Positions 18,801 to 45,700 of a stretch of 64,000 nt of DNA are shown here, piece by piece; the first letter of the stretch is position 1; the number at the start of each line of letters is the position of its first letter. A model generated the notes under the pieces. The model was not told the DNA's origin. It did not search any database and was given only the letters and a program-made list of their open reading frames with translations. The DNA lies in NCBI GenBank assembly GCA_963924565.1, contig OZ004609.1, positions 20,770,001-20,834,000 on the forward strand, read 5' to 3'. The stretch is from Ascidiella aspersa (Eukaryota). A program made the position numbers and the translations under genes.

Positions 18801-19511
18801 TTTGTGACGTTATCTCTGAAAACAAAAAAAATCATCGTTTCTGGTAAGAAAATTATTTTATTTCCACATCTGTGTTTAACCTTTTTGACTTGCTATTTCA
18901 TTGACAGTGCTGTCATTTAAATTAAACCAAAGGCCAACTGCGACAATAATAGAGGGAATATTTAACGTACCAATTTAAAATGACATTGCATTTAAATATC
19001 AAAGCATTATACCTTACTTTTAAGAACAAAATTCACCACGCCTAATCAGGATGCTAAACAAAGAGCGGCCTGACAATTTCCGAGTAAAGTAAAATTTGAA
19101 TGATCTTTACATTCAAGGGGAAATTTAGTAGCAGTACAGTAGCACAGCCACATAGTTATGAGTCTTTATGACTAAGGCACTTTTGAACCCATTCTTCCAC
19201 CTTAAACTGTTTTTTATGACTTTACATACCGTACCTAAATCTATAAGTTAAAAGCGACGTATATTTTTTTACGTTTTGCGCGATTATTAACCGGTTACTG
19301 TACATAGTTGCACGACATTTGTTCGAGAACAACACCCTTCCTATGATTGCTTGAATTATGATGTCACATTTAAAAAATATTAAGATCTTGCTGAACCGAG
19401 GTTTTAATGTGTCGTCATTAATGTTTAAATGTGCCATCCTAAACATTTTTGGTGGGGTAGACCGATGTGTTGCAGCAAAAAGGACAAAATGACATTTAAA
19501 CATTAAAAGGT

Positions 19512-19582
19512 TGCATTGGCCGGGAATCGAACCCGGGCCCCCCGCGTGGCAGGCGAGGATTCTACCACTGAACCACCAATGC
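19512..19582 (-). tRNA. tRNA-Gly (GCC)
   Basis: Reverse complement GCATTGGTGGTTCAGTGGTAGAATCCTCGCCTGCCACGCGGGGGGCCCGGGTTCGATTCCCGGCCAATGCA; intact cloverleaf and A/B boxes; TTTT terminator 3 nt downstream. Confidence 0.97.
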
Positions 19583-19587
19583 AAAGT

Positions 19588-19659
19588 TTCCTACACCGGG
19601 AATCGAACCCGGGCCGCCTGGGTGAAAGCCAGGAATCCTAACCACTAGACCATGTAGGA
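19588..19659 (-). tRNA. tRNA-Glu (TTC)
   Basis: Reverse complement TCCTACATGGTCTAGTGGTTAGGATTCCTGGCTTTCACCCAGGCGGCCCGGGTTCGATTCCCGGTGTAGGAA; intact cloverleaf, anticodon TTC. Confidence 0.97.
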
Positions 19660-25300: not shown

Positions 25301-27451
25301 TGACGTACCATATGCATGACTTTAGAGATTTTTAACCAACTTGTGTATTTGTCCCTTCGGTGTGAGCCCGCGAATAAAATGGCCTTTACAAGCAATGCCG
25401 AGGCTGCGCTTAAAGTGCATACTGCAGTGTCAGTCTAATGTCAGTAGATAAATGAGCAAATGTCACTCTTGCTTGGTCGGCGGGCTGCTTAGGTCCCGAC
25501 TCGCTTCGTCGAGCAAGCGACGTTGACGTATGGTGAGGATTTAGCCAGCGACACGACCACAGGAGAACCTAAGAAATCGGCTCAAACCCAGTGCGGCCCC
25601 AATGCAGCCTGCTTTTTCTTTGGTACGGCTGTTTACCAAACATGCTGCTAGGAGAGCAAGACCCAATGCTGGCTGTTGGCGGCGAAGAGCCCTTATCGGG
25701 AATTATCCTTGCGCTTAATTGACGTGCAATCGCGCGCCTCACCTTCTCGAGGCACACGACTGCGATAGAGCGGAGAAGGGCGCTGGACCCTCGCGAGAAA
25801 AAGGCTCGCGCCAATGACCATTGTGCGACTGCGACTTATAAGACGTGTCTTGTCCTTCCCAATTACCATCACACGCTGCACTCTGCAGGCGCAGATGCGT
25901 GAAAGTTATTAGTGATAGACACGGTGTAGTTTGTTTATGAAAGCTACCTTAAAATGTCGATGATGTCAAAATATATACAAATGTCTGTGAGTTTCAGAGA
26001 CAGGGCTGATATAAAAAAATCTCTAGAAACGTATTAATTATTTATATGGCTTTAGTTATTCCAAAATGAGTTATCAAAGGAAAGGGTATAGTAATTATGA
26101 GTCAATTTTCGTAATTTGTCGTCTGTAGTTAATGTGACTGACATTACAAGTAAAGCTTATGGGAAAGTATAACGAATGGTTTGTTGCCTTTGCCGGGTAT
26201 TTGGCTGTCATCATTCATGTTGTTGCTCACAGTAACACAAAGAAGTTTAGCAAGGGGCAATTCGACGTAATCAGTTTAGGTTAAACGAGATCCTTAAGAT
26301 ATAGACAACGCGGTACACGATCTTCATAGGGAATTCTTATACAGTAAAAAACTGCTTTTGGGGGGCATGAGTTATTTTACGCTTCCGCAATCACAGGGGC
26401 AGCCGATTTGCATGGGACCTTCGTTGCAGCGTCAAAGGGAAACGCAACAAAGACGCATTGTTTCATCACTCGCACGCGCATTTGGAAGCTCGAAGAACGG
26501 CGGGTGATCGCGTCCGGCCTCTACGCCAAGTTAAGAAGGAACCCCGCGCCACTGGAGAGAAGAGGCAATGTTTGTGTGGTTTACCTGCCAATTGCTCTGT
26601 TCCCTTGAAGCCGCCGCTAAGCTGATCAAAATGTTTTTTTCTCGCGCGCGCGGACGATTTCATGAGCGAAAACCGAAAGTGGGCCAATCTAGCCTGAGCT
26701 CTTTTTTGACGTTTAGTTTATAAAAGTGATCTGGTAGACCACAAACTATAAAAATGTTAGATAGCAATTAGCCAATTAGTAAGGTCAGAACAGGCTTCTT
26801 TTATAATTATAATAGCAATATTATTACATAACTGGTGACGCGTATGTGTTGTGTATGCTTTGGTTTGAAATCCACGAGTCGTGGTCGCCGCAGACCTAAT
26901 CTCGATCGGGCGCGTTCGAGCTACTTAGTAAGGTAGGACCACAACGCGATTGCGACGGATCAACGAAAGTGCGCACTTGCCAAGATGCCATTCGACGCGG
27001 GCGCTCTCTCGCGTTTTGCGAGGTTACAGACGGCAGAAAAAAGTCTCCAAGCGGCGCCGGGTCGAGAGAGGCTCGAGTCAATGTTGCTGCCCGCTCCACT
27101 TGTGCTGCTACCAACGCACTTGCTAGTGGCGGCTGCTGTCGATATTTGGCCGACGAGGAGGTTTTTAGCAAGAGTAGCACTCATGATATATACTTAGATT
27201 TGTCGAGAAGAACCACCAGCGGTACTCGATGGTTTCGCATAATTAGTCATATCACGAGGATAAAGTAGCAGTAGCTTAGTGCTCCATAGAATACCTTTTT
27301 GATTTTGTTTATAATGCTATAGATAGAGTATAGTGGTAGTTTCTCACAAGCATGACTTTGCAATTGGTCAAACTCAATATTGATCTTGTTTTGCAGCACA
27401 CCTGTAGCGTTCTAATCCTCTCTGGACAATCGTAAAACTGTAACAAACGAC

Positions 27452-30400
27452 ATGCTTTCCATTAACGCCGCCAACCTGCTGCGCATGTGCGCGCTCGTCA
27501 CCGTGGTCCTGCTGGTGCTGTTCGCGGGAGAATCGCTCGCCAAATCCGGCAAGCGAAGGCGACACCGCCGGCGAAAGGCGCGCCGAGGCGGCAAGGACGG
27601 CAGCGCCGGCGGTGCCAAGGAGCAGCAACTTAACTTTCCCGATCCTCGCTTCGTCGCCGAGCTGAAAAAAGTGCAGATGGCCAAGAAACCGGGAAGGGCC
27701 TCTGCTCGTCCTGCCGTCCCCGCAGCAGCCAAGAATCCCGATTGGACGGAGGCCACGCTCAGGATCCGAGTGCCCGCGGATGACAAAAAGGAGGGCCACC
27801 GAAACAAAAAGGAGGGCCACGGAAAGTTCGGCTACCATTCTCGTATCGGTGACCTTGCCGCGCGTGTCGTGCACGTGGTCGACCCTGGACGCTCATCCCA
27901 CTTCGGATGCGGGCACGAGATTGCCAACGCTCACCAGATTCCCAAGGACGAGCCCTGGATCGCTTTGATCAGCCGCGGCAAGTGCTACTTCTTCAACAAG
28001 ATTAAGCTGGGTGAGCGGTACAACGCCAGCGCCGTGGTGATCTACGATGACAGCGACGGCAAGGTGCAGGTCATGAATGTCGCAGGTGCGTGCCTCACCT
28101 TTGTGTTTTCTATAGTTAGCTTATCCTATGTTCGCTTATAGCCACATGTCGACAGTTCCAGTGTGTGAAGTCTCTCAAGTTTGCAACGCACAAGTATAAT
28201 TATAATTCTCGTAATAGTACGTAATCTTGCCAGAAATGCCAATGTAATCATTACCACTTGGCACGTAGCTATTACGATCGGTGATATTTTTTCATATCTT
28301 GTTGAGAAAACCAATGTGCGATTTTTTCCAAACTACGACTAAAATCAAACCAGCGCGTCATTACGTTACAATATGTAAAAGCACCTTCGTCGAAAATCGT
28401 TTTAAGTAAACGACAACCGCGTTTGAAGTAGTTGTAAAACGGCCCGCGCTGCGCCCACAACAAAGTTAAAAGCTCGACAATAAATTCGTTCAAGAAATAT
28501 GTTGTCTCCGAAGATTTAAACTATATAACATCGTAGCACCTTTGACATGCCGCGGTATTTCGCCTTCATTTTGTTAAGCTGCCAGATTAGTCATGTCGCA
28601 TGTATTTACGGCGAAATGTTACACAGACGAGCACCTGTCAGCGCCAGCAGTGTACAACCCTATACGATACGTGATTCACTGCCTTATGTTCTGGCTTTAT
28701 GGTATCGCGAGTGCTTCGTAAAAGGTTGGCGTCATTCTGTTTATCGACTATCGACGGATAAACATAAATCGGACGTATTTTCGGCTTAATATTTTTTGCT
28801 CGCTGTAAATGGGAATTTAGCTATGGCTTTTTCTAAACACGCGCATAAGGCCCGCCAAGCATAGTTCCATCGGTCATGCAACGTTACGCTTGCTGCCATT
28901 TCACAAACGCGATGGTCCGAACAAAAGTAGGCGCTCACGTTAAATGGAAGCCTTTGTTTTAAGCGCATGAGTTAGGGTACAGCCTCAATCATCTTTGACG
29001 TCGTCGTTCTTGCTCCTCAGAGTTCAAGTATAGTGCGTTGGACGAGCATTAAAATAGAGGACAATATTAATTCGCTTTTCACTTTCTATATTTGGATCTC
29101 GGGTTTCATTGTGACATTGTGTCGGACGGCGTCCGGCTTGTTGATCTAGGGCGTCGCGAGTAAGCTGTAAAAACGCAGAAGGCTTTTAATGTCAAAACAT
29201 CGCCCGATCTTGCTCTTGCCCTGCTACCGACGCCGCCGCTTGTTTGTTCGAATAGGATCGCTTTCGAATGACCTAGCACAAAGCGCTAAGAGAGTCGCCT
29301 CGCACTGGGCTGTCACCCCTCGCTATGTACACAAGCGCGAGTCGACATACTTGGGGCCTAGGGATACCCTGACCGGGGATAGGCTGTCCGTGAAAAATAT
29401 GGACACAGTTCGGCTCGACTGGACCCCTGACTGCCGCAGTGGGCAGCATTGTCACAGCTGGTCCGACGAAAGAGTCCCCGCCTAAAACCTAAAGTTCGGG
29501 GGATTTGGAAGGGTTCGCTGCAGTAGCTTTTCCCTCATTATCCTTATCGCCAACCAAGAGCGTCTGTAAATAAAACCAAGCCGAGTGATGGACGGGCCGA
29601 ACAAGCGCTAGGCCTTTTAAAACAATTAGGGCATTTGTTAAAGATTGTCTTTCATCAACCAGGCCCGGTCAGTCAATCTCTCAACGCTCGTTACATAATT
29701 TTTCGCGGGACTGTAAAAGTATCCCCTTCGCCTAGCCCTAGTGAGTCATCAGCTTTCCCGGGTCATTAGTTAATTTTCATCGCATGTTTCTTTTAAGTAT
29801 GCGAATATAATAAGGCCCAAAATTTAAACAGTGTCAGAAGCTGTACATGTGCGCCAATAAACAAATACTTTCGGCAATGGATTTTCTCCTATGCTGAACT
29901 TCCCCTATATTGAAGAAAACAAAAATAACCTACTCTAAAAGATCGCGCTTCCCGTCCGAAGTAACCCCAGCCGTGAGAGCGCTCTAGCGTTTTTAGGCAC
30001 TCGCGACTTCAAAAGGGCTTATGCACCCTGCGTTGTTGACAAGCGTTCGAATTGGCCATCGACGTGTTACCCCTGGACGCGTGTCAAATTCAAAGCACCC
30101 CCCAAAATTGGCCCTCGACCCCGGTCCCCCGGCCCCATTGTGCCTGCATCGGGACAGACGATGATTATCGCGCGCGCTTTCGCACCTGTATCGAATGTGC
30201 GGGCGAGTTGGGCAAAAGCGACGCTCCATTTGGCGTTGGGCATATTGTTTTGTTTGCCGCCTTTCGCGACAATAGCCTGTTTTGACCAACTTTGGTCGGA
30301 TACGGCGCGGAGGCCGACAGCGGGGCAGGCTCTCACGTTTTGTGTTTTCCAACTGTCGCTTTCCGCGTTGTTGTTGTTCAGCTCGCGATGGCAACGCCAC

Positions 30401-33400
30401 AGCTAAAGCGCCCGCAAGGCGTCTTCGCTTTCGAGTCCCAAGTATAAAATGGCAGCGCTTCGCTCTGTGCGAGACTGCGCTTACCTTTGAAATATCGCCT
30501 TCCGAACAATCCGTCTTATTTACGGCCTAGCGTTTTCACGACAGCACAGGGAAGCTACGATTCGCAGCCATATATGTCCGTACATATCATGTCGGAACGA
30601 CATATACGACATATTTTGTATGACGACGTTTTTAAATTCGCTGCCTCACACATGCAGTGCACGGCACTCGCCTCGTACAACTAACAATAAAAAACTGCGG
30701 CCGCTCGATTTACGGCCGGTCATAAAAGACGCTTCGATTATGATGAAACAGAGCGGACGACGCGAAACTCCTTGTTGTTCAAGAATGACCTGAAAGCGAA
30801 CGCGGTGTCACGGGTTCACGGCACGAGGAAAATTTGTCGATCTGACCCTCGTTTCGCGTAAAATTGTTACTTACACGCTTTCGCTGAATTGGTGTAATTA
30901 TTCAGTCATAACTACGGGTTCCAAAGTGTCAAAATAGGACCTTGAGGTTTCTATATTTAGCATAAAACAGTCATCGCTCCAACGCTCCAGCTGGTAAAAC
31001 ATACAAATGTCGTCGGTTGACAAACGAAGTGAATATATTGCGTTTGCAACTCAAATAAAAACAAACCTCTCGTTATTTCGCGGTTTGAACTTCGCCAATC
31101 GAAGGCGAGTCACGACATTACTAGTTAGCCTCGTCACTGTCTACATTTCTGAAATTACCGGGAAGGCAATTACGGCCGAGCGCCACAATTCGGGCGTCTT
31201 AAGGTTAGCGGTCACCTCTCCACTTAAATGATCGTTGTTCCACAGCTTGACGCTTAAGATCGCTCTTGTCAGTGGGCGTCGGCTTCGAATTCTTATCATT
31301 TGCCTTAAAATTCGATTTGGCGGAAGTCTTACAGAGCCTTGGAAACAGTCTCCTTTGTGTGAATGGTTTCAGTTTGCCTTGCGCTCGCATAGCCTATTAT
31401 CTTGGCCGATCGTATCTGAAGGTGCGCTCATATGCGTGTGCGGTGTGTATCTGGAAATCGTAGATCGTTACGCTTCACGATTTACAAGAAAAACAGCCTC
31501 CAATTGAAGTGCCGAGATCACGCACTGAAGAGCGTCTCCGTGTCTAGCTATTTCTGTTCGTGTCGTCACTCCCGACTCGCCTTGTGTTTGTTTGTTAGCC
31601 AAACTAAAGAGGTCTTTGGCATTTAATTTGCACAGTCGCCAGCTAGTATGGCGATCGGCCAGTAAATCAAAGCTTGTTTACATTTGGCACACGAGGGTTC
31701 TTAACATTTTCGATACAAGCGGTCGCTGCTTGACTTTCTCTTGCGTGTGTGTTGGCGCCGAAAACAAATAACGTTCTAGTCTGAGTGAACCAATGAATGC
31801 ATCAAAGCGCTCCTCACTTGTTGTATTAAATACATGCCATGTTCGAGGATCTGACAATGGGTATCTTATTCGCTTTCTTAACAGCGGCTTATAGACTGTT
31901 GAAGATTAAATCCCCTGATACGGGAAAGAACATAGACTGCTAGTCACCATTTTAACAAACACATGTCGTTTTAGTATAGGCTCCACTTGAAGACATATGC
32001 TCTCGATTGATTCACAAAAAGCAATTTAATTACTTGGTTTTGCGCACTAAAATTCCTTAGCGGACTTACATTCGGTTGAGTGTTGTATTCGGATTCCTAA
32101 CTTAAGTGGTGTGGCAAGGTTAGTGGTAATCTCATTTTAAACTCTTCTAAAATTTTTAGTTTGTCGGCGGTATAATCTCTTCGTGATTACATAGCGCACG
32201 AGAGTTACCATTTGTGGTCCACTCGCTCTTGCTTTGTCGCGTTGATCGGTGCGCTATATCGCATTTGATCAGACCGCGTAATTATTACCCGTCGCGAAAT
32301 TATATAGACCCGCTGGCCACGAGTGCTCTAGAGTTGTAGTGCGCACCGGGATATTTATAAGCCTGTATGATTTCGACTTCGCGCGAAACGGTTATTATCG
32401 TGAGATTTCGTCAACATCTTTTTAGATAAATATGAATAACAACTGAACGCGGACAGTCAAGGCGTGGCGAATTTTGAACCCGATGTTGACGAGGTGCTGG
32501 TGTCAAGACGCCGTATGCGATAAGTGCGAAAGCGTTTAGCGATCGGCCTCTTGCGCGTTTGCCTGCCTTATCAGATCGTTTCTTAACCTATAAAGAAATC
32601 ATCGTCGAATCGTTGCGCGACCGCAAATTGACAGCAACGTTTTTGGTCCAATTCGATGCCATCCAGTCGGAGCAATTCTGTTTTGAAGGCGTGCCCGTCA
32701 GTGATTGCCACAATCAAATTAGATTCCTTGTCGGATGTGGAGATCGTATCTTCTCGCCTGCAATAGACCCATAACACGACTTTTGCATTACTCTTGAGGA
32801 ATTTTACTGGGATCGCGCATCCCCGACCGAATCCGGTAAGCATCCAATCTTATCGACAAGTGTCGATCGCGGTCATATAAACAAAACAAACCGAAATAAG
32901 CGCTTGCCGCCAGAGGGACCGGGTGTTCGAAATACATAGTTTCGACGGAACGCTCGGCCTCAGGCGGTTGCTTGTGTATATTTGGGCTCGTTATCCCGTG
33001 TAGTCATCGGCAGCCTTTGCTTTCAGTTAAATCAACATGACATAATTATAATCGCTACAGGCACGTTTATTCCGGGCTTTAACCATTACGGAGAAAAATC
33101 GCTAAATAATTTTTTGGTGTTGGTTGGTCGCTCCCTAGCGTTTAAAATTTGTGTGTTGAGAGCAAACCGGATAGCTTAGCGAGACAGGGCACCAGACAAA
33201 TGAACGAGTTTTTAATTCCCCAAATCGACCAGCCGAAAAAGTACGCCGGAGCGAACAGTCCGCTGCATATATGGGCGCCTCACCTCCCATTTTCGCCTTC
33301 TGATCATTTCAGTTCTGCATAAGCGGGCAAGGTAGCGCGTCTGCGCTATCCGCGGAATGGTAATGCGACACCCCGAGCGCCTAACCCCAACCGTTAAAGA

Positions 33401-34264
33401 GGCTCGCGGCGCTGGCGTGGGGTGAACTTGTTTTGAGCGATTCTTTTTCAGCCACCCCGCTTATACCTCGCAGCGCACCCTCCCACACAGCCAGGAAGTG
33501 ACGGTTGATTGGATGTCATTACGCCGCAACACTTATCCCCCAAACCCGCGCCTTACTTTCTCGCGGTTTCTGCCCGAAAAATGACACTCTTTCTCAGTTC
33601 GTTGTCCGATACCGACCTGTCAGCATTTTTGGGTACGAGAGCGATGATTGAACGTACTTCTTTTTTGTTCTTGAAAATCCGTATCGCGTTCACAAGAGTA
33701 TTTACAGCGCAAGTTCTCCTTAGGTTTTATGAGCTTCTTCTGGTTTGACTTTCTGAAACTGAACCTGGTACAATTTTGCCTTAGGTTTTCGTGACGTGGC
33801 GTTAACTTGAGAGACTTCCGCGACTATGATACCCCTGATGACGTAATGTTTTTGTCGAAAAGTAGTAAACGCTTTAAAATTGGACATGTAAAATTCAATG
33901 GGCTCCCAATTAATAAAATATTTTCCTTGCAGGTACTGATATGGTCTCACTCATGGTTACCAAAAAGTTTGGAAACAAATTGGCAAAACTGGTCGACAGC
34001 AAGCCAGAAGTTTACCTCCACCTTAAAGTTGGAAAGCAACACACCCAGTCAAGCAAAAGCACACAACTAGTAGCCAGCACACAACCTGTAATGAGTCGGG
34101 GAAGTGTTAACGCTACATCCAACCTTCCAAGCGTACTTCAGACTGTGCTAAACAAAAACATGCCCCTGGTAACCACGACTAGTTGGGGAAACGCCAACGT
34201 TCCAAGCTGGTTTTTAACTCTAGCGTTACTGCTACTTGCAATTAACGTTACACTACAGCGGTGA
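27452..34264 (+). CDS. Goliath/RNF130-RNF150-type PA-domain protein lacking TM-RING, predicted GPI-anchored; 2 coding exons, 321 aa
   Basis: Exon 27452-28085 (donor CAG|GTGCGT, phase 1) plus exon 33933-34264 (acceptor TTTTCCTTGCAG). Signal peptide, polybasic stretch, PA signature GC...PWIALISRGKCYFFNKIKLGERYNASAVVIYD...VMNVAG|TDMVSLMVTKKFGNKLAKLV...VYLHLKVG, then a Ser/Thr-rich stalk and terminal SWGNANVPSWFLTLALLLLAINVTLQR*. AATAAA at about 35014 and 35082. Confidence 0.85.
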
Positions 34265-35368
34265 TGTGGACTGTAAGGTCGTGGTTGAACATTGCGCAAC
34301 ACAAGCGCACACCAGAGCAGCCCGTGCGAATTGGGAACGTTGGAGGTGGAGGTCTCCAAAATAATAATAAGACGATTGTTGTGGTATATTAACTTTAACG
34401 TACATCTTACACAAAGTCCAGTTTCTTGCTGTTTAGTCTGTAGCCTACATGGGCAAATCTGTAATTATTGCGAAATTATTGATTGCAGTTTTTAGGCACT
34501 GGGTTGACGTTATGTCCGCAAGTCTATATGTGTCATACCTCAAATATCTCCCAAACGTGCACACATTTTTTCTTATTTTTCTTTTACTCGCACTGATTTC
34601 ACATTGCTTTCATTGATTTGGGCACAAAAACACATCGCTGCATTATTTTCGCATAACTTTGTAATTTTTTTCTACAAGCGTGTGTCAAACTCAAATAGGA
34701 CAATCACCCATGCGATTTGCGATCCGTGTACATTTGTACATATGCCTTTGATTTGATTGATGAGCGCACGCAATTTTATGTTTTCACTTACACCCTCGTA
34801 TAAGGCACACCACCTTTATGTTTTTGCAACATGGTGAATTGTTTTCAATGAAAACCTGTGCTCACTGCTCATACTTCGAAAAGGTGTCAAAGTTCCTCCG
34901 CAGAGTGCTTGAATTATGCTGGTCGTTTTTCGTGCTTCGCTTTACTTTTAATTTGTTTGTTTGCGTTTTTGCTTCCATCTTTTTACTGTCTTTATATAAA
35001 CGCGTTTAATTTTAATAAAGTACAAATGTAATTGAACGATTCTTTTTTTAACTTCTTTAAAGCTGTCTAACATTTGGTAAAAATAAAAGACTGGCACATT
35101 TTATAGTAAAAGTGAATAATATATGAATATATGTCACTCGACAGCGACCGTTTACAAAAAAAAATGTTTAAACCCTTTGAAACAATGACAAAGAAACTCC
35201 ACTTCAAACGTTGTGATAGTTAGAACAATCGGTCGAGCAGTGTGCGCTAACAACATGATTGTTGAAACAGAAAAAATCAAAACCTGCAGTTAGAACGGAA
35301 GACATGTTAGACGCCGGCATTTTCTATTTTGTCAGATTTTCCTACTTGTTTGAATATGAATAAATTAG

Positions 35369-35571
35369 GGCGCTGGTCTAGAATCCTACCACAGTTCTAA
35401 AATCAACGCACAAAATTTGAGTTAGGTTGCGGGTTAGCATTTGGGTGTGGGTGGGTCAAGTATTATTATATTCTTTATTTAATAATAATACTTGACCCAC
35501 CTTTACCCAAACGCTAACCCGCACCCTAACCCAAAAGGTGTTTCGTTGTGGTAGGATTCTAGACCAGCGCC
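35369..35571. mobile_element. 203-bp foldback DNA element with 8-bp TSD (GG termini; superfamily unclear)
   Basis: Perfect 25-bp TIR GGCGCTGGTCTAGAATCCTACCACA; inner arms also inverted; perfect TSD TAAATTAG at 35361-35368 and 35572-35579. Confidence 0.9.
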
Positions 35572-36786
35572 TAAATTAGTTCTAGATATAGGGTCAAAAT
35601 ACTTTTTGTCTTTTCATGGTCAGCTGAAAGCGACAGGCATGAAACTAAACACTTTGATTTAACCTCTGACCACCTGGATAATGAAGTTTGTGCACTTAAA
35701 AAATGGCTGTAAAGTCACCCAAGTTTTCGTAACGGCGCTAATACTTTAGAAGGGGTTAAAGCAGATTAGAAAACATGTAACACTTTAATCCATGTTTTAT
35801 CCACTAGTTGCTTTACTTCCGTTATGCGGACAATACACTTAAAAAAAAGCGTAATGAAAAATGCTTTGGTTCAGTATTGAGAATAGGACGAGCCTTAAAA
35901 TACAGTTGTGTCAATTCGACAATATTTTGGTATTGATGCCACTTGAACAAAAGTTAAAAGGCTAAACAGCTTAAAAACAACAATTGCTCGTGTTGCCCTT
36001 GAGACGACAAAGTGAGCGTTTAAAAGCTACTTGTCGAAGGCCACGTTTCTCCCGAAGGATATGATTTTGTTTTCCTAACCTCAGGGAAGCTCCCAGTCGT
36101 TGCTCCGATAATAGCAGACAGTATTCCGGAATCGTCCAGTCTTTAAAAAATGTTACTGTCATTATATCCGCCTTTTCTGGTAATCTTGATTTATTGGTTC
36201 GCGACAGGCAGCCTTTAAAACTGCGTTCTCATCTTGCTTATTGGGTTTGCTTCGAAAAGCGCTGACCCGGACTACACAAGGGTAGAGAAAATATTGACCT
36301 AACGCGTCTTTTTCGGAATGTCACGAATACCCAGTAATCTGCAAATGGCGTAGGAAGAAAAACAACAACAAAAGGCGGTTAATGGGGAGCTCAATAGGCT
36401 TTAAAGTTTGGCCTTGGGGCAATGCTGACTGGGTATCTGGCGTGGCGTAAGGCAAACGTCCCAAAGTTGTCAAAACACAACCTCGAGCACGCCCTGTTGT
36501 TCTCTTGTCACGTCTCGCAGACGTCGATGTTATCCATTTAGTCGGGAGAATCATCGGTATATTTCGTTGTTGTCGTTTTCTAAAACTGACTGATTTGTTA
36601 CTGCAGCCAGGCACGCACGAATTTTGCTAGTTGGGAGAAAAACTTTTCCGTTCGGACGGATTCTGCTGCTGATTATGACATTTAGCGATTTGATTTGTGT
36701 TTAAAGTCTCATGTTATAAAAATCCCAAAAGGCATGCGTTTCCCCCATTATGTGTTATATGATATTTTTCTTTGTAGACCCTGAAA

Positions 36787-39700
36787 ATGCAATTAGAGCG
36801 CGGTTATATAATTTTCAAACTGAGGGCGATGGTAGCAGTATGTTTTGTGCACTGCTGTTTGGCCGTGGGAGAATATCCACAAAGTCACGTAATTACTATA
36901 AGAAATACAATACAGAGAGGTTAGTTGTGCCCCTCGGTATTAAATTGCTTAAAAAAAGCAAATTACTTTCGTAAATAATATCGTAAATTATTTTCTAAAC
37001 ATATGGTCGTGAGTGAATGTGTATTCAAGGCCTTTTTGAATTTTCTAGATTTTTTTATACTCTTATACATATTTTAATTACTTCGCCTTTCACATTTTAT
37101 TTATTTCGAACATGTGCATTTTTTTCACTTCATAACCTCGTTCTTTTTAACTAAGAAATACCTAAACAAATGAATAAAATATAGTTTTAGATGATCGTTA
37201 TTTCGGCGTAGGGCTAAACTAAACATCCCTTTGTTTTAATGCTGTATATGACTATAATGAGCTAATTTAACTAACTCCTATTGCGTCGGTCTTGGAATAT
37301 TTTAGTTTCGGGATCGAACGGCTCGTCATTGAGCGCCAATATCCACAAAGCATATGTCGCCCTCCAGCGGTTCCACGTGACCTCAACCCCTGGACTGGAG
37401 CGCGATTGTTTTGCCGATCGATGCACTTTCGCTTACGTACAAAGCCTGCTGAGCGACGACACTGAAGCAGTAAGTTTGTTTATGACCAAAGAATAACCTT
37501 ATCGTTACCCTGATAATGTAGTATAAAGCACGAAAGGACATTTTTCACATTCGTGATACCACTTACATATACAGTTGCGACAAACGTAAGGGTACACCAA
37601 AAAATTAAAATATGATGTTCATTTTGTTTCCAACTGCTTGCGTTCTCGTGTATTGGCGAAAATCCAACACGGAAGGGTTCCGGCGTGTTTCCATGCCGAA
37701 GCCCCGATAGATGAGCCTGGAATTCGCCGAAGCGGCTCAACGCCATGTCGTTTTGCGACGCATGGTTGATGCGTGCACGGGAGCCGAAATATTCCGACTG
37801 TAATTTCACCCGGATTCGTTTGCGCTCGAGCCAAGCGACGCCGGTGGCAGCGGATTCCGCGCCGGGACTTCACAGCGCCGCCACGCGATCGTTTGACCCC
37901 GTTCGCGATCGGCTCCTCGTCGATTAGGGCAAAACAAACCGGCGAGTGAACAACGGCGCTATTTCGCGTCATTTTGTCGAATGATTTGGCCGCCGCCGAC
38001 CAAGGGTACTTCAGGCTTGCGCGTGGGGTCAAAACATACCGGCGTTGAACTTGCCAATCCACCCCTGTTGGTCGTCGTGTCAATCAAGTGCGTGATGATT
38101 TTCGCTTTATCGTTTTCGAGTAAAATATTCATGATTTGAGATGAATATCATGATTTCAAGATTTTGTTCAGGGTCCTGTTTTCTATCGAGATTAGTTTAC
38201 CTTCAACATTTTTCTTGTTTTTTAGTTATATGTTTAGTACAATCCCACAAAAGTCCTAAATGCAGAAAATGTATGAAGCCCGAACTCGAAAATATGTCAT
38301 GGTTTACGTATTTTTAACTTGTGTTTCGTTAATGGAAAACAAATTTGGAAAAGAAAAAGCTTTTTCCAACTTACCTAATCAAAAACGGAAATCTTTTGTA
38401 AGCAATTCAGTAACTATGAATGATTTATTTAAATGTTCTGCGTTGGTGTACATCAATCCGCCAGTGTTCACCAGGCACTTGCCCTTGTTTTTTTACCGGT
38501 GGAATACCGAACTCCAGGGATTGGGTTACTTTTGCTGAATTGACTTTGTGGTCTACAATGACGCAAGTGGCGCCTGCCAAGTTACGTAATTGTTGTTGCA
38601 CCAAAATGTCGAGGCAGCAAGACAACGAAACGCTGTCAAGGTGCAAGAAAACAAAACGCTATTATAACCGGACCAAAAGTGTAAAAACAATACGATCTGC
38701 GGCTGCGGTGAAATGCGAAAGCATAAACCTAAGCCGTGGGTGAAATATCGCGAAGGGCGCATAACTATGCGCGCTGATGCCGTGTTTTGTAAGTCGACGC
38801 CGACTCCGTGCAAAGGTTGACGCTTGTTTTTCGCGCGCGAAGACCCCGGCCGAAGCGAACCGTGCCGCCCCACCGGGTAACTCTCCACCCACCGTGAAGG
38901 TTAATTAGCGGCTCGGCATCCCGCAACCGACCGGCGCCGCATTGTTTTTGGCGCTGTGCGACCCCGCACCGGTTTCGGCTGCCAAATTCCCCCTTTCGCC
39001 CCAATTTCGGGGCGCCCGTAATCCTCGCCGGCTGTTCGCGGTTTCGTGTTGTTCGTCTTAAAAAGCAGCTTTTCGGCGAGCGGCAATGACCCCGAGGTCG
39101 AGAAGCAGTCACAGGCGAATGAAAGCGTCCCTGGAGAAAGTGTCCAACTAACGGTCGCCGTTCAAGTCGTGACAAGCCATTTATGAACTCTTTTCTGTGC
39201 TGCGCTAGTCACTTTATAAACAAGGCCAGTCTGTACGAGACGACCGTTTCCGCTAAGCGCATATCACCTTTGTTTGGATAGCAATAAATGTTGTTGTTCA
39301 GTATTACTTCGGGTCACTGTGCCGAATATCACCTTGTGCGATAAAACGGCAACATGGTAACACTATGACGAATTTTCTCAGACTTTCTTGTCTCTAGTAA
39401 ATTGAATGAACACACCGCTAGTTGTGCAGCACGGTGTGATTTGTTTGCAGAAGCGCCCCCAAGAAAAGTTCATGCTGCTGCCAATGTTTCAGGCTTAGCT
39501 ACGAACCGGCAAAATTTGTTCGGCGAAATTAACGGGTCCATTTCCCCATCGTAGGCACCTGCTTGTCGGCTGCGCTGTTTGGCAAAGGCAAAAAAAACAA
39601 CCGCGAGAGCATTGCGTTGCAAAATCGGGCCGAACAACTGGTAATGGTGTCCCGGAAGTTGGGCTTTACACGTCGCAGAACGTTGTATGGTGATAAATAG

Positions 39701-42700
39701 TAAAAGAAACCGCATTGATCCTATAGGATTTACGCAATTCGAATAAAAATGAAGCGTATTGTTGAAAATTGTCATTTTTTACAGAAGTTTTTATTTTGCC
39801 TGAACTACAACTCTTATACACAAACTTAGCTTATTTTTGTTTTGTTGACACGGTGTCTTTTTCTTACAGAGTTTGTACTGGAATGTGCTCAACTGCATCA
39901 AACATGACGTGAACTGTGAAGGTGAGCGATGCGGACCTTATAACAATTTAGTCATTTAAAACGTTACATCAAATCCAATACAGAAGTATAGGCAGTATAT
40001 TTAGAACATTTCTATTAGTTCTTTGTTCGTTTTCGTATGGCTTTGATTCTAAATCTAAATACTATATGGCTTGGAAATTAATTTCTAAATCTAACTGCAA
40101 TCTCCAGCCATTATGCTCCAATGGTCATTTAAAGAACTTTTTAAATATTTGAGGTAACTTGTGTATTGTCTGTGTAAAGAGATTAAATGAGCTTTGCATT
40201 TGGATCTTTTTTATGTAAATATTAATTTCATTATTTTTTTCTTCAACAAAACGGTTTGGTTTTGCATTTTTGTTAATGATAAATTAGAACAATTTTATTT
40301 TTTAAGTCTGTTTATTCCACCTATTTTAAAGGCTGTATTGAGACATACGTTCAACATAAATACTCAACACAGTATTATCTTGTGGGTCAAACAAGTCGTT
40401 ACAACCGCCTAAGTTTATTTTCTTTTCGGCAACGTTGAAAAAAAAATGATAAAGTTTTAAGGATAGCGCAAACTGTAGCACAGCGGTTAGCGCGTACGCT
40501 AGCTCGCTTGCTAAACAAAACGAATCCATTGCACCACACACCATGCTCCAAACGAGACTGATGCCCTCGTGCTCTCACACGGTTTGCTACTACACAAACA
40601 AAGGAATGTCCTTTAGGGCAACACAGAACGGTAAAACAATCAGTGATTAGGAGTCGAAACTCAAAAGGCGTAACAAAAGAAACGAAAGACGAAAAGCGCA
40701 GTGAAGCAAAGCAACGCAACGCAAAGTAAAGTAAAGCAAATTAAACAAATAATAATTTACACAACATTACTACAACCTCCAACCATTATGCTCCAAAAAT
40801 AAAGTTTCATTTAACACTCCAACTTAAAGTGTCACGTTATAACCATGCGATAGCAACGAGTAGAGAAGATTCCTTAACGTCAGTTATTGCTTGTTGCGTC
40901 AGACGAGAGCACTTGGGAAGCATGGGAGTCCTGGGGCAACTGTTCAGCCACTTGCGGCGCGGGAGAGCAAGTCCGGTGGCGCGAGTGCGAGCAGGCGAGA
41001 TATTGGGCGCCCAGGTGTCCCGGGGTCTACCAGGAAACACGCAAGTGCGAGATGGACGGACTGCGGTGTATTGGTAAGTCGCTGAAATATTGCTGGTAAT
41101 AATTGTTTTATCAAATTATAATCCACTTTACGCACTTTTAGTCGTTCAAAAAAACTTTCGCGTTAATCGGGTAAATCATTTCTCAAACAAAAAGGCTAAG
41201 TGTAAATACAGTTTTAATTTTTCTGAAGGACTTGATACCATCGGGCCCGCGGCATCATCGTTTTGAATGTTCGTAGGAACTAGGAAGGTCGGGCTGTTAA
41301 TGCTCGAAAAAAACACTTAAAAACACCACAACAAATGCTTGAAAATACTACTTGTTGTACGCGAGCAACAATTTTTTAAAAGTTTGCAAAAAGCACTCAA
41401 AACTAATATTGTTGCTGCTGCAGTAAGTTATACTATCCCCTTTATTTAAATAAATATAAAGATTTCAGTAAATGCTTTTTGTTTAACAAAGTGGTACGCC
41501 GCTAAGTTCAAAGACGCTATCGGTGGTATTCTGCCAATAAGTTTTGTGAACACCTGCACCAAAATTATCGTAAGTGGAATTCGTAAACTCACGTTTGTAC
41601 CGAACATGCTGGTGCAACATCTTAACCGATGTTTAAACCTCGCGGAAGGTGGATCACACTCTTTTGACGGTTGCTGCTAGAATAACTGATGCACACCAGC
41701 TAGTATAAGCATTCACGTTCCTGCGGTCGGCATTTGCCGGCACAAATGAGCCGCCGTTCGTCAACAAAAGGCCGACGTTTTAATCTCGACCACCCGAGCT
41801 TCGCGACCGCACGCGTCACGTACAAGCGTCGCTTTGCCCGAACTGCAGCGCGCATAAAAAGCACCCGAGAAAGGAGGAATTCGTTCGGAATGACAAGTTT
41901 ATTCATTTTTATCCCAAAAATAACGTATGACTTTTGGTCTCCGTTCTTTGTTGTATGAAATTCAACCGTTTACATTTATTTTTCATGTAACTGAAAACTG
42001 AAAAACAATCCATTTGGCGTTTCATTTCATAACAGTAAAAATAAAGCGTTTAATCACCATTACTGCTGTACAAAATTTAACTGTTTCTATTTATTTTACA
42101 TCTAAGTGAAAACTCCAATCCATATGGAGTCTCATTTCATAATAGTAAAAACAAGGTAGCCGATAAGTTTGAACCGGTAGCAAATGTCAGGGCAGAGCGT
42201 CGCATAGTTTGCGCACCCCTGCTTTACTGGGTGTAGCAGTTCTTTGATTGATCTCACTTTAAGCTTCCTCGACACGAAGGCTTGCCGACTTCTGAGCGTT
42301 TTAGCCGGTGACGCGCACCCTTGTCGTAAGTGAGCAATCCGCGGAACTTTGCGGTAATCCTAAAATAGCAGTGGAATGACTGTGGGCATTCCTGCTGATC
42401 CGTGGCAAAGCCTTCTCCTGAAACAACCACCTACTATTTGAAACTATATCTGTTTTGTGGTTTTCTTGTTTTTTTATTTCGAAAAAAGTTTTTCTTTTAT
42501 TTGTCAAATCAACTAAGGTTAAATTACTAACATGGATTTATAAAAAAATAATCCATTTGCCGATAGAAGTTTTTCTAACATCGTGTAAACGTGTCGAATA
42601 AATTCAGCCACTTCTTATGTAAGGCATTTTTTCTGATGTATATAGCCCCTATTCAGCTTTCACCTTTGCCTTAGAACAACCCGAGGCCAAGCCGGACGAG

Positions 42701-45700
42701 TGGGGCCCGTGGAACCCATGGAGCCAGTGTGACGTCACTTGCGGCAGAACGGGCGTGGTGACGAGGACCCGGGTTTGCCTCCCCTACGACGCCCCGTGGT
42801 ACTGCGTGGGGGAAAAGTCCCAGAGTCGCGGCTGTACACAGATTCCACCATGCCCCGGTAAATTAAAAGTTTAGAAACAACTCCACCCTTTAAATTTTTT
42901 TTCATTGAAATCCACACACTTACTTTTGTGGTACATTTTGCCGGTTCAAATGTCACACGATGATTGCCGTTGCCAAAACGTTAAAAGTCTATAAATTAAA
43001 AAAAATATATAACGCCATATTAACGCACGTCGTACATGTTTTTTTTGAAAGTTCACTATCAAACTTAATTGTTGGCGTATTTGTTTGAAATAAAAGCTGA
43101 GTTTTAGGTGGCACTGTTGCCATATTTTATTTATATTTTTTTGACAAGCTTTTGTGCAATGTGTTTTATTTGTCACCTTAAATTGATATAAAACGATGGC
43201 AAGAAATCTTGTCAGTGCCACCTAAATCTCAGTTTTCGATTCAGACAAATTCGCTAATCAAACGAGTTTAATAGGGCTAACTTTAATATAGTGAAACAAG
43301 TTAATATAGCAAAAATGTCTCGTATAGTGAACGGCGCCTGGCAGTTCTGGACGATTTGGAGCCCGTGCCTTGTGAAGACTTGCGGAAGTGGGGTGAGAAA
43401 GCGCACAAGGGCCTGCTCGCACCCTGTTGGCCTTGGCAAGAAGTGCGTCGGCGCTTCGTCCGAATACGTAGCCTGTCGCAGCATTACACCGTGCAAAGGT
43501 CAATTGATGCCTCGAATGCTTACATCTGGATCAGACAGAGCCTCTTAAAGGCTTTTTTCCTTAGTTATACGACAATTTGGTTCCTCATTCTCATTTTCGC
43601 CCTTTAATTAACGAACAATAATTATTAGAAGTAAAGGTATACAGCGTCTGACAATTCAAAGTGTAAAATATTTTAAATGTTACTACCTTGATAATTAATT
43701 TTCGTTTTTTTCGGCTCGTCCAATGCTTACACGACCCAGGTGACCATTGACAGCCAACAGAGTCCTTACCTTCAACATGGTTTTTTAACTTCATTTTATT
43801 TCGATATGCATAATCAATTTTTGCCAAAAATGTAAAGCCTTCTTTTCCTAGGAGTCAATAAAATCCACCCGAAAGTTATATCTGTATTCAAAATGCTAGT
43901 TACAATCGCAGTGTTGCAGGCTAACAAACTTTGAAACTACTGAATCCATAACCGATAACCAGTACATAGTTTATACCTTTCTACCTCAAACAAACCACTA
44001 ATACGGTCTTTTATTTATGTTCTTACCGCAGAAGACCACTTCACCACCATCAACCACTTCTCCGAGCACAGCTCACTGCTTTTCAGGGAGCAACCTCCCT
44101 CCTCCTTCCTCCATGTCTTCCTTCGCTCCCGGCCACTCTTGGCCGCCGGAACCGTTTTCCGCTACGTGGGGAACCCCCGGGGCTTCGCGGCGCAAAGCAA
44201 GTCACCCACCAACGTTCGTGTGGCAAAGGGTCCGACCAGACCAAAAATGGCGGCGGGCGCGACGAGCAAAACGAAAACTGCCGAAAAGCACAAATCCGAG
44301 TTTATCCGCATCTCATTGGCCGAAAGTGGTCACGTGATGGTCCACGCTTCCATTAACGGCTCGGACGAAGTCGTCATGGAAGTCGGCCAAACCCTGGTGA
44401 GATATTCAATTCAAGTTACCCGCAACCATGTCCCTGTGATTTACTTGCGGATGTTGTTCTCTTGAAATGTATTTAATGAAAATTCCACATGCTTTAAACG
44501 TCATTATTTGTTGGTATACATATTGCTTCACCTATTATTAAATGATACCACTCTCTAAACAAAAATCCTGGTTCCGCCCTTATGCAAAGTCAGTTGAGTT
44601 TAGGTATTTTTAAATTGTCAAAATGAAATGTTTTGAGGAATCTATAGTTATAACGCGGCTGTTTAAGAACGCGTGAGGTTTGACTTCAGAAAATTGACAT
44701 GCTTTCGATCCCGCTTTAGTTAACATAAACGGCCCCAAACACTGCGAGTGCTTAGAACCAGGACCATTTTTTGCACTTTATGCGGCTTCATTGTGTCAAC
44801 CTGCGATTTAGGTGACACGACCGATAAGATAGTAAAAATAGAGTTTTATCAGTGTAAAAATAGGTTTAAATTAAAAAAAACAACTTTGGCAGGTTGGCCA
44901 CTGGAACAACATCCGCGTCACGGTGGTGAGTGACGTGCTGCTTGTGCGACTCAACGACGGGCAGAACATGGGTTCGGCCCTCCACGCCACCGCAGGGGAC
45001 GCCCCGGGCACCAAACCGACCGGTGCCGCTCCGGCCAAATCGTCCTGGTGGACCGGCTTGTGGGGTTACGTAGACGAAATGAGCAAATTGAGCGGTGACT
45101 CAATCGGGAACCTGATCAAGGGCAACCGGGCCGTTCTGGCTTCGTTTAAGGGCTTTGTGGGCCTGGGCAAGGTCGCGAAGGGAGACGTGAGCTTTAGGGG
45201 TGAGGCGTTTCTGTTGTATTGTAACAGTGTTGGGTATACAGTTTACAACAGCAATGGGAACGAGTCACAAGAGTGTAAGCGAGTTATCCAAACTCCATTC
45301 GACAAATAGTTTTTTTGTTTTATTAATTAAAAAAACATTTCTAATTTTACTCTGTATAAATGCTATTAAGTTTTAAGTAAAATTCCTTTTAGATAAAAAT
45401 ATTAAAAAAAAAACTCGCGATTCCTGGCGAAATTTTTCGCAACGTAATACGACTCAACATAAAATCCCAGTTCTTGCGCCGAACCTGAGAATTCCGTTTA
45501 CCTCTTTAGATTTAAGACTTTATACGGCCGGCAACAATACACCACGTGAAACAGTTTAATCGCTTTGGCAAATACGACAGAATGCTGCACTACCGTCCAT
45601 TTTTAAATTGCATTCAACACTGCCGCAATGTTTACACTCCGAAAAGGTTACGTGTCGGAGCTGCAAGTCAACTTCAAACGCTTCGGTTTGGACAAGAAGA

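What the first reader, a model, noticed from the sequence alone, without database searches (positions are those of the whole stretch)
27452..34264. RING-less, probably GPI-anchored Goliath-type PA protein: an E3 ligase ectodomain turned cell-surface protein
Seen: signal peptide plus a full Goliath-type PA domain. Where RNF128/130/149/150 continue into the TM (SRxSxxFVSISFIVLMIIS) and RING-H2, this frame runs into a Ser/Thr-rich stalk containing a possibly vestigial SRGSV, then small residues (S-W-G-N-A), a hydrophobic tail and a stop. I found no TM or RING exon before the next gene. Known: in PA-TM-RING ligases the PA domain captures membrane substrates for ubiquitylation. Inference: a decoy or co-receptor that binds such substrates without degrading them. 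I know of no described GPI-anchored member of this family.
Basis: partly seen in the sequence, partly recalled or inferred. Interest (0 to 1): 0.8.

Follow-up and report, generated by a model that had tools for sequence, protein, structure and literature searches.

The report
Ascidian Pen-1/Rnf149-r: RING-less PA protein
This is a real, expressed two-exon gene for a ubiquitin-ligase-like ectodomain that has lost its ligase part and probably sits on the cell surface by a lipid (GPI) anchor, but it is the orthologue of the already published ascidian gene Pen-1/Rnf149-related, so only the anchor and topology reading is new.

Summary
Exon 1 (27452-28085) and exon 2 (33933-34264) encode about 321 aa: a signal-peptide-like N-terminus, a polybasic stretch, a PA domain, a Ser/Thr-rich stalk and a 15-aa hydrophobic C-terminus. 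An RNA-like run carries a contig with exactly this splice. That contig runs through the stop codon into a roughly 770-nt 3'UTR. The window holds no TM or RING exon. The next gene, a TSP1/LamG gene, is syntenic with Ciona.

The PA domain is Goliath/GRAIL-type. Its best solved relative is RNF128 (3ICU). The only paralogue in the genome is a full PA-TM-RING-H2 gene 4.95 Mb away, which shares the phase-1 intron.

The gene is not new. It is the orthologue of ascidian Pen-1/Rnf149-r (Phallusia, two Ciona species, Styela). Vitrinel et al. 2023 (PMC10219245) already reported that Ciona Rnf149-r lacks a RING. They gave a CRISPR phenotype and tested the dominant-negative idea against Rnf150, with a negative result.

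That paper never uses the terms signal peptide, transmembrane, secreted, extracellular or GPI. All five full-length orthologues end in a rule-conforming GPI signal: small residues, a 5-10-aa spacer, a 12-19-aa hydrophobic end and 2-10 trailing residues. I put a GPI anchor at about 0.65, from rules only, without a trained predictor.

The parts
27452..27541 (+). Signal-peptide-like N-terminus (residues 1-30; h-region MCALVTVVLLVLFAG; likely cleavage after SLA)
   Evidence: Read from the sequence. The same layout occurs in all orthologues, which end ...VEA before the basic run. No trained predictor was available.
27542..27595 (+). Polybasic stretch KSGKRRRHRRRKARRGGK directly after the presumed signal cleavage site
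   Evidence: 13-16 K+R within 50 residues in all five orthologues. Furin-like RX[KR]R is present in three of the five. Function unknown.
27821..28085 (+). PA domain, first part (from GKFGYHS to the phase-1 exon end), with the conserved Cys pair C153/C178 and the NAS sequon
   Evidence: Pfam PF02225, 28.3 bits. Profile against PDB: RNF128 3ICU, E 4.5e-10. 58-66% identity to orthologues in the PA core. Cys and sequon positions.
28086..33932 (+). Intron (5847 nt, phase 1), at the same place and phase as in Ciona Pen-1 and in the genome's Goliath paralogue
   Evidence: gt..ag ends. X3 contig joins 28085 to 33933. Ciona exons cover aa 1-217 and 217-314. Paralogue exon ends read.
33933..34039 (+). 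PA domain, last part (TDMVSLMV...LKVGKQ)
   Evidence: Aligns to the orthologues, to the RNF128 end ...IEVGKKH and to the paralogue's PA-end exon.
34040..34180 (+). Ser/Thr-rich stalk with an NAT sequon (S+T 35% over the 49 residues counted, which run on through S83-W84), poorly conserved
   Evidence: Composition. The equivalent region in the Phallusia model has pLDDT below 30. 20-27% identity to orthologues.
34181..34210 (+). Candidate GPI omega region S-W-G-N-A-N plus spacer V-P-S-W. Best omega is G85 (G-N-A; G-S-A in the 34191 A>G allele)
   Evidence: Rule-based scan. The N/S polymorphism was seen in runs X2 and X3.
34211..34264 (+). C-terminal hydrophobic core FLTLALLLLAINVTL (15 aa), then QR and the stop TGA
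   Evidence: The paralogue's true TM is about 26 aa and is followed by a basic stop-transfer stretch and the RING exons.
34265..35040 (+). 3'UTR, about 770 nt, with AATAAA at 35014-35019
   Evidence: X3 contigs cover 33929-34974 at about 750-780 depth, with nothing after 35100. Poly(A) signal found.

Best explanation
The locus is the orthologue, in this ascidian genome, of the ascidian gene Pen-1, also called Rnf149-related (Rnf149-r).

Shown: it is a two-exon, expressed gene. Its product keeps the luminal/extracellular PA domain of a Goliath/GRAIL-type PA-TM-RING ubiquitin ligase. It has neither the conserved transmembrane helix nor the RING-H2 domain, so it cannot act as an E3 ligase.

Inferred, about 0.65: the N-terminal hydrophobic segment is a cleaved signal peptide. 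The C-terminal 24-26 residues are a GPI-attachment signal that is replaced by a GPI anchor at about G85 of exon 2. The mature protein would then be a PA domain on a flexible O/N-glycosylated stalk, on the outer leaflet of the plasma membrane, with a polybasic N-terminus.

Inferred, about 0.35: it works non-catalytically. It would bind through its PA domain the partners that PA-TM-RING ligases recognise, and so shield, cluster or present them rather than ubiquitylate them.
For: Orthology. The only strong database hits are ascidian proteins: Phallusia 'RNF150 (PEN-1)', Ciona savignyi, Ciona intestinalis LOC100175825 (E 1e-38 to 1e-43) and Styela clava LOC120332810. The PA core is 58-66% identical against 18-30% in the linkers. 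Ciona has the same two-exon structure. Microsynteny is conserved: tRNA-Gly/tRNA-Glu upstream and a TSP1/LamG gene downstream.

Goliath origin. The family profile hits the RNF128 PA domain (3ICU) at E 4.5e-10, four orders of magnitude better than any other solved PA domain. Foldseek on the Phallusia orthologue's model ranks 3ICU first. The next database relative, P0008, is a PA-TM-RING protein. The only paralogue in the genome is a PA-TM-RING-H2 gene at C3:25.74 Mb with a phase-1 intron at the homologous place.

No RING or TM exon.

Expression and 3' end. The X3 spliced contig runs through the stop codon. X5 stranded reads lie in the orientation expected for a + strand RNA.

GPI signal. All five full-length orthologues have omega candidates with small residues (GSG/SGS, GNA, SKG/GYS). 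The spacers are 5-10 aa, the hydrophobic cores 12-19 aa and the trailing residues 2-10, with 24-33 residues after omega. The tail sequence is not conserved, whereas the true Goliath TM is nearly identical between P0008 and the paralogue.

Luminal location. The PA domain has exactly two conserved Cys at fixed spacing. The NAS/NAT sequon is shared with bona fide PA-TM-RING proteins.

Published function. CRISPR loss of Ciona Rnf149-r disrupts pharyngeal muscle fate (PMC10219245).
Against: No trained signal-peptide or GPI predictor could be run, so the anchor call rests on rules alone.

The Phallusia and Styela tails end in 10 and 6 residues after the core, some of them charged. That is looser than a textbook GPI signal.

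The very basic stretch directly after the N-terminal hydrophobic segment could, by the positive-inside rule, disfavour translocation of the PA domain.

The decoy idea was tested in Ciona against Rnf150 and not supported: there was no phenotype and no rescue.

Run X3 is not on record as RNA. I infer that from its exon-limited depth and its spliced contig. Contigs cannot exclude minor isoforms.

The AlphaFold model is of low confidence (mean pLDDT 53).
Confidence: 0.7

Rival explanations
1. The protein is a type I single-pass membrane protein. The C-terminal hydrophobic segment stays as a transmembrane helix with a 2-10-residue cytoplasmic stub, and no GPI is attached. It would still be a RING-less PA ectodomain at the membrane.
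For: The tail is predicted as a helix (residues 302-325 of the Phallusia model). Phallusia and Styela have 10 and 6 residues after the core, some of them charged. The terminal basic residue (QR, KR, ER) recurs in four of the five orthologues.
Against: The hydrophobic cores are only 12-19 aa and are interrupted by T, Q and N, against about 24-26 aa in the true Goliath TM. Small-residue clusters sit at the right distance upstream in every orthologue. The tail sequence itself is unconserved.
Confidence: 0.2
2. The topology is inverted. The N-terminal hydrophobic segment acts as an uncleaved Nexo/Ccyt signal anchor because of the strongly basic flank behind it, and the C-terminal segment is a tail anchor. 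The PA domain would then face the cytosol, where it could meet cytosolic partners such as MAPK-pathway components.
For: There are 13-16 K+R in the 50 residues after the h-region and only one basic residue before it. The Ciona authors looked for a link to Braf and MAPK.
Against: To my knowledge, every characterised PA domain is luminal or extracellular. The h-region is only about 15 aa and has a small-residue c-region (SLA, VEA) typical of cleaved signals. The conserved Cys pair and conserved sequons fit a luminal domain. From my own knowledge, the GPI-anchored prion protein also has a polybasic stretch right after its signal peptide.
Confidence: 0.07
3. The locus is a decaying truncated copy of a Goliath gene, or a gene-model artefact, with no function of its own.
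For: It lacks the catalytic half of its parent family.
Against: The reading frame is intact. The gene is spliced and highly represented in run X3. It is conserved in architecture and synteny across Ciona, Phallusia, Styela and this species, with 58-66% identity in the PA core. There is a CRISPR phenotype in Ciona.
Confidence: 0.02

Closest known systems
Ciona Rnf149-related (Rnf149-r) / Pen-1 (KH.C2.994; NCBI LOC100175825), and Phallusia mammillata PEN-1
   Same: Orthologue. It has the same order of parts: signal-like N-terminus, polybasic run, one PA domain, stalk and hydrophobic end. It has the same two-exon structure with the intron in the same codon, and the same neighbours. The PA core is 58-66% identical. 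There is no RING.
   Different: A different species. The stalk is longer than in Ciona. The omega region reads WG(N/S)AN instead of GSGS. Maternal posterior localisation and the developmental role are not tested here.
Goliath/GRAIL family of PA-TM-RING-H2 E3 ligases (RNF128, RNF130, RNF149, RNF150)
   Same: The PA domain is closest to the RNF128 PA domain (3ICU) by profile and by fold. It shares the GKFG.HS and RG.C.F motifs and a phase-1 intron with the genome's own Goliath gene.
   Different: It lacks the conserved transmembrane helix (FV.[14 protein letters not shown].QRFR) and the RING-H2 domain, so it is not an E3 ligase. It has a polybasic N-terminus and a GPI-like end instead.
PRADC1 (secreted PA-domain-only protein of vertebrates; from my own knowledge)
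   Same: A signal peptide plus a single PA domain, with no catalytic domain.
   Different: PRADC1 is short (about 190 aa) and soluble, with no stalk and no hydrophobic C-terminus. I had no PRADC1 sequence from a tool, so relatedness was not tested. Nothing named PRADC1 came up in the profile searches.
RING-deleted ZNRF3/RNF43 (engineered dominant negatives; from my own knowledge)
   Same: A PA-like ectodomain at the membrane without ligase activity. This is the precedent for decoy behaviour.
   Different: Those are artificial constructs that keep their TM helix. ZNRF3 and RNF43 ectodomains are much more distant here (12-16% identity; Foldseek E about 1e-5, against 1e-9 for GRAIL).

Membership tests
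PA domain (Pfam PF02225) | Score above Pfam's gathering threshold | tested here: met
   28.3 bits against a cut-off of 23.9 on exon 1 alone. The remainder of the domain lies in exon 2.
Ascidian Pen-1 / Rnf149-r | Best database relatives are the named Pen-1/Rnf149-r proteins | tested here: met
   E 1e-38 to 1e-43 for exon 1. A reverse search from Pen-1 back into this genome was not run. The window gene's own exon 1 and the family profile find one copy here plus one distant Goliath paralogue.
Ascidian Pen-1 / Rnf149-r | Same gene structure and genomic neighbourhood | tested here: met
   Ciona exons cover aa 1-217 and 217-314. tRNA genes lie upstream and a TSP1/LamG gene downstream, colinear with the window.
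Ascidian Pen-1 / Rnf149-r | PA domain only, no RING | tested here: met
   Published for Ciona in PMC10219245.
Ascidian Pen-1 / Rnf149-r | Maternal mRNA localised to the posterior pole (postplasmic/PEM RNA) | not testable with these tools
   Needs in situ hybridisation on eggs and embryos of this species.
Goliath/GRAIL PA-TM-RING E3 ligases | Goliath-type PA domain | tested here: met
   3ICU is the best hit by profile (E 4.5e-10) and by fold. The nearest paralogue is a PA-TM-RING gene.
Goliath/GRAIL PA-TM-RING E3 ligases | Conserved transmembrane helix after the PA domain | tested here: not met
   No match to the paralogue's TM exon in the window. The C-terminal core is 15 aa and unrelated in sequence.
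Goliath/GRAIL PA-TM-RING E3 ligases | RING-H2 domain | tested here: not met
   No Goliath-type RING-H2 core motif in any frame of the 64-kb window. No tblastn match to the RING exons. The RNA contig ends in a 3'UTR.
GPI-anchored proteins | N-terminal signal peptide | tested here: inconclusive
   The n/h/c layout with SLA or VEA is present in all orthologues. There was no trained predictor, and the basic flank is unusual.
GPI-anchored proteins | C-terminal signal: small omega/omega+2 residues, a polar spacer (5-10 aa here), and a hydrophobic end with no real cytoplasmic tail | tested here: met
   Rule-based scan of the window protein and four orthologues.
GPI-anchored proteins | Actual GPI attachment | not testable with these tools
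   Needs PI-PLC release, Triton X-114 partitioning or mass spectrometry.
PRADC1 | Sequence relatedness to PRADC1 rather than to Goliath PA domains | not tested
   No PRADC1 sequence was returned by any tool. A tree with PRADC1 and RNF13/167 outgroups was not built.

The most novel reading that the evidence does not exclude
Pen-1/Rnf149-r is the first GPI-anchored derivative of a PA-TM-RING ubiquitin-ligase family. It would be a natural 'RING-deleted' ectodomain on the outer leaflet, made from a maternal mRNA tethered to the posterior cortical ER. It would act at the cell surface, perhaps with its polybasic N-terminus bound to heparan sulphate, to control which membrane proteins escape ligase-driven endocytosis. 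That would move the published Ciona cardiopharyngeal phenotype from a presumed intracellular, post-transcriptional mechanism to an extracellular one.
Probability: 0.3. Interest if true: 0.6.

Novelty: new member of a known kind. Interest (0 to 1): 0.38.

Why it matters
The gene family and its lack of a RING domain are published, so the find is not new as a category.

The topology still matters. [quoted passage not shown] Its text never uses the terms signal peptide, transmembrane, secreted, extracellular or GPI.

If the protein is a GPI-anchored ectodomain, its partners must be extracellular or luminal, and the phenotype needs a different explanation. The family would also be a natural example of how a membrane E3 ligase ectodomain can be turned into a non-catalytic surface protein. 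The change here is a 3' extension of the PA-end exon in place of the TM and RING exons.

Tried and rejected
The two exons were searched separately by reference. The full-length Phallusia orthologue stood in for folding.
- AlphaFold on the 7-row alignment gave a weak model (mean pLDDT 53). Its Foldseek ranking is supporting evidence only.
- phmmer of exon 1 alone against PDB did not reach RNF128. Only the family profile did.
- 'Vestigial SRGSV' is not conserved in the orthologues, and the paralogue's TM exon gave no listed match to exon 2. Rejected as chance.
- tblastn of the paralogue's TM and RING exons against the window gave only noise-level hits, E 0.14 or worse, without the cysteine pattern.
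- No listed holder of the stretch is on record as RNA. X3's RNA nature is inferred. The one run on record as RNA, X5 (raw reads, not indexed), gave only 1-2x depth on exon 2 and the UTR.
- dN/dS was not attempted. The orthologues are too diverged (40-50% identity), and no DNA from a close relative was at hand.
- No tree with RNF13/167, RNF43/ZNRF3 and PRADC1 was built, for lack of tool-derived sequences.
- Earlier notes of this scan held nothing on this locus.
- Species identity was not established. The gene is 42% identical to the Styela clava orthologue in exon 1, so the species is not Styela clava.
Full report
**Anatomy**

The + strand holds an ORF that starts at ATG 27452, with an in-frame stop upstream at 27413. 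It runs to a consensus donor (cag|gtgcgt) after 28085, in phase 1. A strong acceptor (ttccttgcag|) before 33933 restores the frame. The frame runs to TGA at 34262-34264.

Exon 1 encodes, in order:
- a signal-peptide-like start (MLSINAANLLR, then MCALVTVVLLVLFAG, then ESLA);
- an 18-residue polybasic run;
- a poorly conserved linker;
- most of a PA domain (Pfam PF02225, 28.3 bits against a cut-off of 23.9).

Exon 2 encodes, in order:
- the end of the PA domain (TDMVSLMV...LKVGKQ);
- a 49-residue stalk with 35% Ser+Thr;
- S-W-G-N-A-N, then V-P-S-W;
- a 15-residue hydrophobic core, then Q-R and the stop.

**Transcript evidence**

I laid four runs on window:33500-39499, within the 6000-letter limit.
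- X1 and X2 cover the stretch evenly and are DNA.
- X3 has depth 6 in the intron, about 750-780 from 33929 to 34974, and nothing beyond 35100. One of its contigs (667 nt) aligns to 33929-34571 and carries 24 further letters at its 5' end.
- Those 24 letters occur once in the window, at 28058-28081. They are followed there by GCAG, which is also the sequence at 33929-33932. The contig therefore reads exon 1 up to 28085 joined to 33933, which is the predicted splice.
- The contig continues unspliced through the stop codon into the 3'UTR. AATAAA lies at 35014.
- X5, the one run on record as RNA, gives 1-2x depth with first mates on the minus strand. That is what a + strand mRNA gives in most stranded libraries.
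- No joint leaves exon 2.

Caveats: X3 is not recorded as RNA, and I infer it from this pattern. Contigs cannot exclude rare isoforms.

**No TM or RING exon**

- A full RING regular expression and a Goliath-type RING-H2 core pattern find nothing in any frame of the 64-kb window. The same core pattern finds the RING exon of the paralogue described below.
- tblastn with that paralogue's exons matches its PA-middle and PA-end exons to 28016-28108 and 33938-34048. Its TM and two RING exons give only noise.
- tblastx against the Ciona locus shows that the next gene in the window (about 37299-50747, + strand) is colinear with the TSP1/LamG gene that follows Ciona Pen-1. The weak X5 reads at 36700-37499, which lie on the same strand, may come from that gene's 5' end, though only the last 200 bases overlap the tblastx match.
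- Upstream, tRNA-Gly(GCC) and tRNA-Glu(TTC) at 19509-19659 are also syntenic with Ciona.

**What the gene is**

The word-based protein search with exon 1 returned only ascidian proteins:
- Phallusia mammillata 'E3 ubiquitin-protein ligase RING finger protein 150 (PEN-1)', 326 aa;
- a Ciona savignyi PA-domain protein, 307 aa;
- Ciona intestinalis LOC100175825, 314 aa;
- fragments that end exactly at the exon-1 boundary.

A profile of these added Styela clava LOC120332810 (482 aa, with two tandem PA domains). After that came a PA-TM-RING protein, P0008, at E 5e-16.

All full-length members lack a RING and end in a short hydrophobic tail. Identity between the window protein and the Phallusia and Ciona proteins is 58-66% in the PA core but only 18-30% in the N-terminal linker and in the stalk plus tail. 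That is the pattern of constraint on the domain. Ciona's gene has the same two exons, aa 1-217 and 217-314.

**Relation to Goliath ligases**

- The family profile hits the RNF128/GRAIL PA domain (3ICU) at E 4.5e-10. The alignment runs to the shared ...VGK.H end. The next solved PA domain is four orders of magnitude weaker, and ZNRF3/RNF43 are not reached at E of 1 or less.
- Foldseek with a low-confidence model of the Phallusia orthologue again ranks 3ICU first, at 1e-9 and 25% identity. ZNRF3 and RNF43 score about 1e-5 at 12-16% identity.
- Both exon 1 and the family profile find only one paralogue in the genome, at C3:25.746 Mb, 4.95 Mb from the window.
- That locus has a signal-peptide exon, PA exons, and a TM exon reading [30 protein letters not shown]. 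It also has a split RING-H2 (CAVCIECY...LPCG, then [24 protein letters not shown]). So a separate full-length Goliath gene exists.
- Its intron between the PA-middle and PA-end exons is phase 1 and lies within one residue of the Pen-1 intron.
- The paralogue's PA-end exon stops right after GKRHPQPG and splices to the TM exon. The Pen-1 exon simply continues into the stalk and tail. I infer that the stalk and tail arose as a 3' extension or replacement at that exon. This is not shown.

**Prior knowledge**

Vitrinel, Vogel and Christiaen (Int J Mol Sci 2023, PMC10219245; bioRxiv 2022) studied the Ciona gene as Rnf149-related (KH.C2.994). They state the following:
- The gene also encodes the postplasmic/PEM RNA Pen-1.
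- The predicted protein has a PA domain but lacks the RING.
- CRISPR loss disrupts atrial siphon muscle specification.

So the RING-less architecture and the decoy idea are already published.

The paper's text has no occurrence of signal peptide, transmembrane, secreted, extracellular or GPI. Its only uses of 'membrane' refer to a cell-membrane reporter. A library search for GPI-anchored together with PA-TM-RING or protease-associated domain found no paper about such a protein.

**GPI reading**

With a rule-based scan, the window protein and the four full-length orthologues all show four features.
- Small residues at a candidate omega and omega+2: GNA or SWG here, GSG/SGS in Ciona and Phallusia, SKG/GYS in Styela.
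- A spacer of 5-10 residues.
- A hydrophobic core of 12-19 residues.
- Only 2-10 residues after the core, with 24-33 residues after omega.

The true Goliath TM helices are about 24-26 residues long. They are nearly identical between P0008 and the paralogue and are followed by a basic stop-transfer stretch. The Pen-1 tails share only their hydrophobic character.

A polymorphism at 34191 (A>G, in X2 and X3) changes the omega+1 residue from Asn to Ser, which fits the GPI rules equally well.

The PA domain has exactly two conserved cysteines at fixed spacing. It shares an NAS/NAT sequon with bona fide PA-TM-RING proteins, as expected for a luminal domain.

I put a GPI anchor at about 0.65, a TM stub at about 0.2 and an inverted topology at about 0.07. 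The inverted topology is raised by the conserved polybasic run (13-16 K+R in 50 residues) directly behind the N-terminal hydrophobic segment. The function of that run is unexplained. It could be heparan-sulphate binding, a furin site (RX[KR]R in three of the five orthologues), or an influence on translocation.

**Mechanism**

Shown: the product cannot be an E3 ligase. It keeps a constrained Goliath-type PA domain. It is expressed.

Published: it is required for a cell-fate decision in Ciona.

Inferred: it is a non-catalytic PA-domain protein on the outer leaflet. It would bind extracellular or luminal partners and shield or present them rather than target them for ubiquitylation. Rnf150 is unlikely to be the relevant counterpart in the cardiopharyngeal lineage.

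**Verdict**

The gene is a new orthologue of a known, published family. The one element that appears new is the secretory and GPI topology. It is testable and would redirect the search for this protein's partners.

Noticed in passing
window 19509-19659 (- strand): Adjacent tRNA-Gly(GCC) and tRNA-Glu(TTC) genes. They are nearly identical to a pair at the corresponding place upstream of Ciona Pen-1 (L005 3873-4101), so microsynteny is conserved.
   Followed up: yes
window 35358-35582: A MITE-like palindromic element: 36-nt terminal inverted repeats enclosing a 54-nt inverted repeat. It lies just past the Pen-1 3'UTR. Summed contig depth in DNA runs X1 and X2 is about 3000 times that of the flanks, and it is also present in the RNA reads, so it is a very high-copy repeat.
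   Followed up: partly
window about 37299-50747 (+ strand): A multi-exon gene colinear with the Ciona TSP1/Laminin-G gene (947 aa) that follows Pen-1. Stranded RNA reads of X5 at 36700-37499 lie on the same strand; only the last 200 bases overlap the match, so assigning them to this gene's 5' end is an inference.
   Followed up: partly
window 59916-61705 (+ strand): Two overlapping long ORFs (322 and 280 aa). The first has a weak reverse-transcriptase match (RVT_1, E 2e-4). Probably a retroelement remnant.
   Followed up: no
window 13397-14131 (+ strand): A 244-aa ORF with several weak TPR-repeat matches. Probably an exon of a TPR protein gene.
   Followed up: no
window 34191: A>G polymorphism (runs X2 and X3) that changes Asn to Ser at the candidate omega+1 position of the GPI signal. 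It was the only coding difference seen in exon 2, while the UTR and intron carry several.
   Followed up: partly
P0007 (Styela clava LOC120332810): The Styela orthologue has two tandem PA domains (37-42% identical to the window's). It still ends in a GPI-like tail, so the domain was duplicated within the family.
   Followed up: partly
G000:C3:25,741,600-25,747,200 (L002, L004; - strand): A full-length Goliath-type PA-TM-RING-H2 gene on the same chromosome, 4.95 Mb from Pen-1. Its exons were read out by hand.
   Followed up: yes
window 26000-34000: GC content is 46-49% across the Pen-1 exon 1 and intron, against 33-40% in most of the window. Exon 1 is so GC-rich that it carries long antisense ORFs (27374-27874, - strand), which I take to be chance products of composition.
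   Followed up: no
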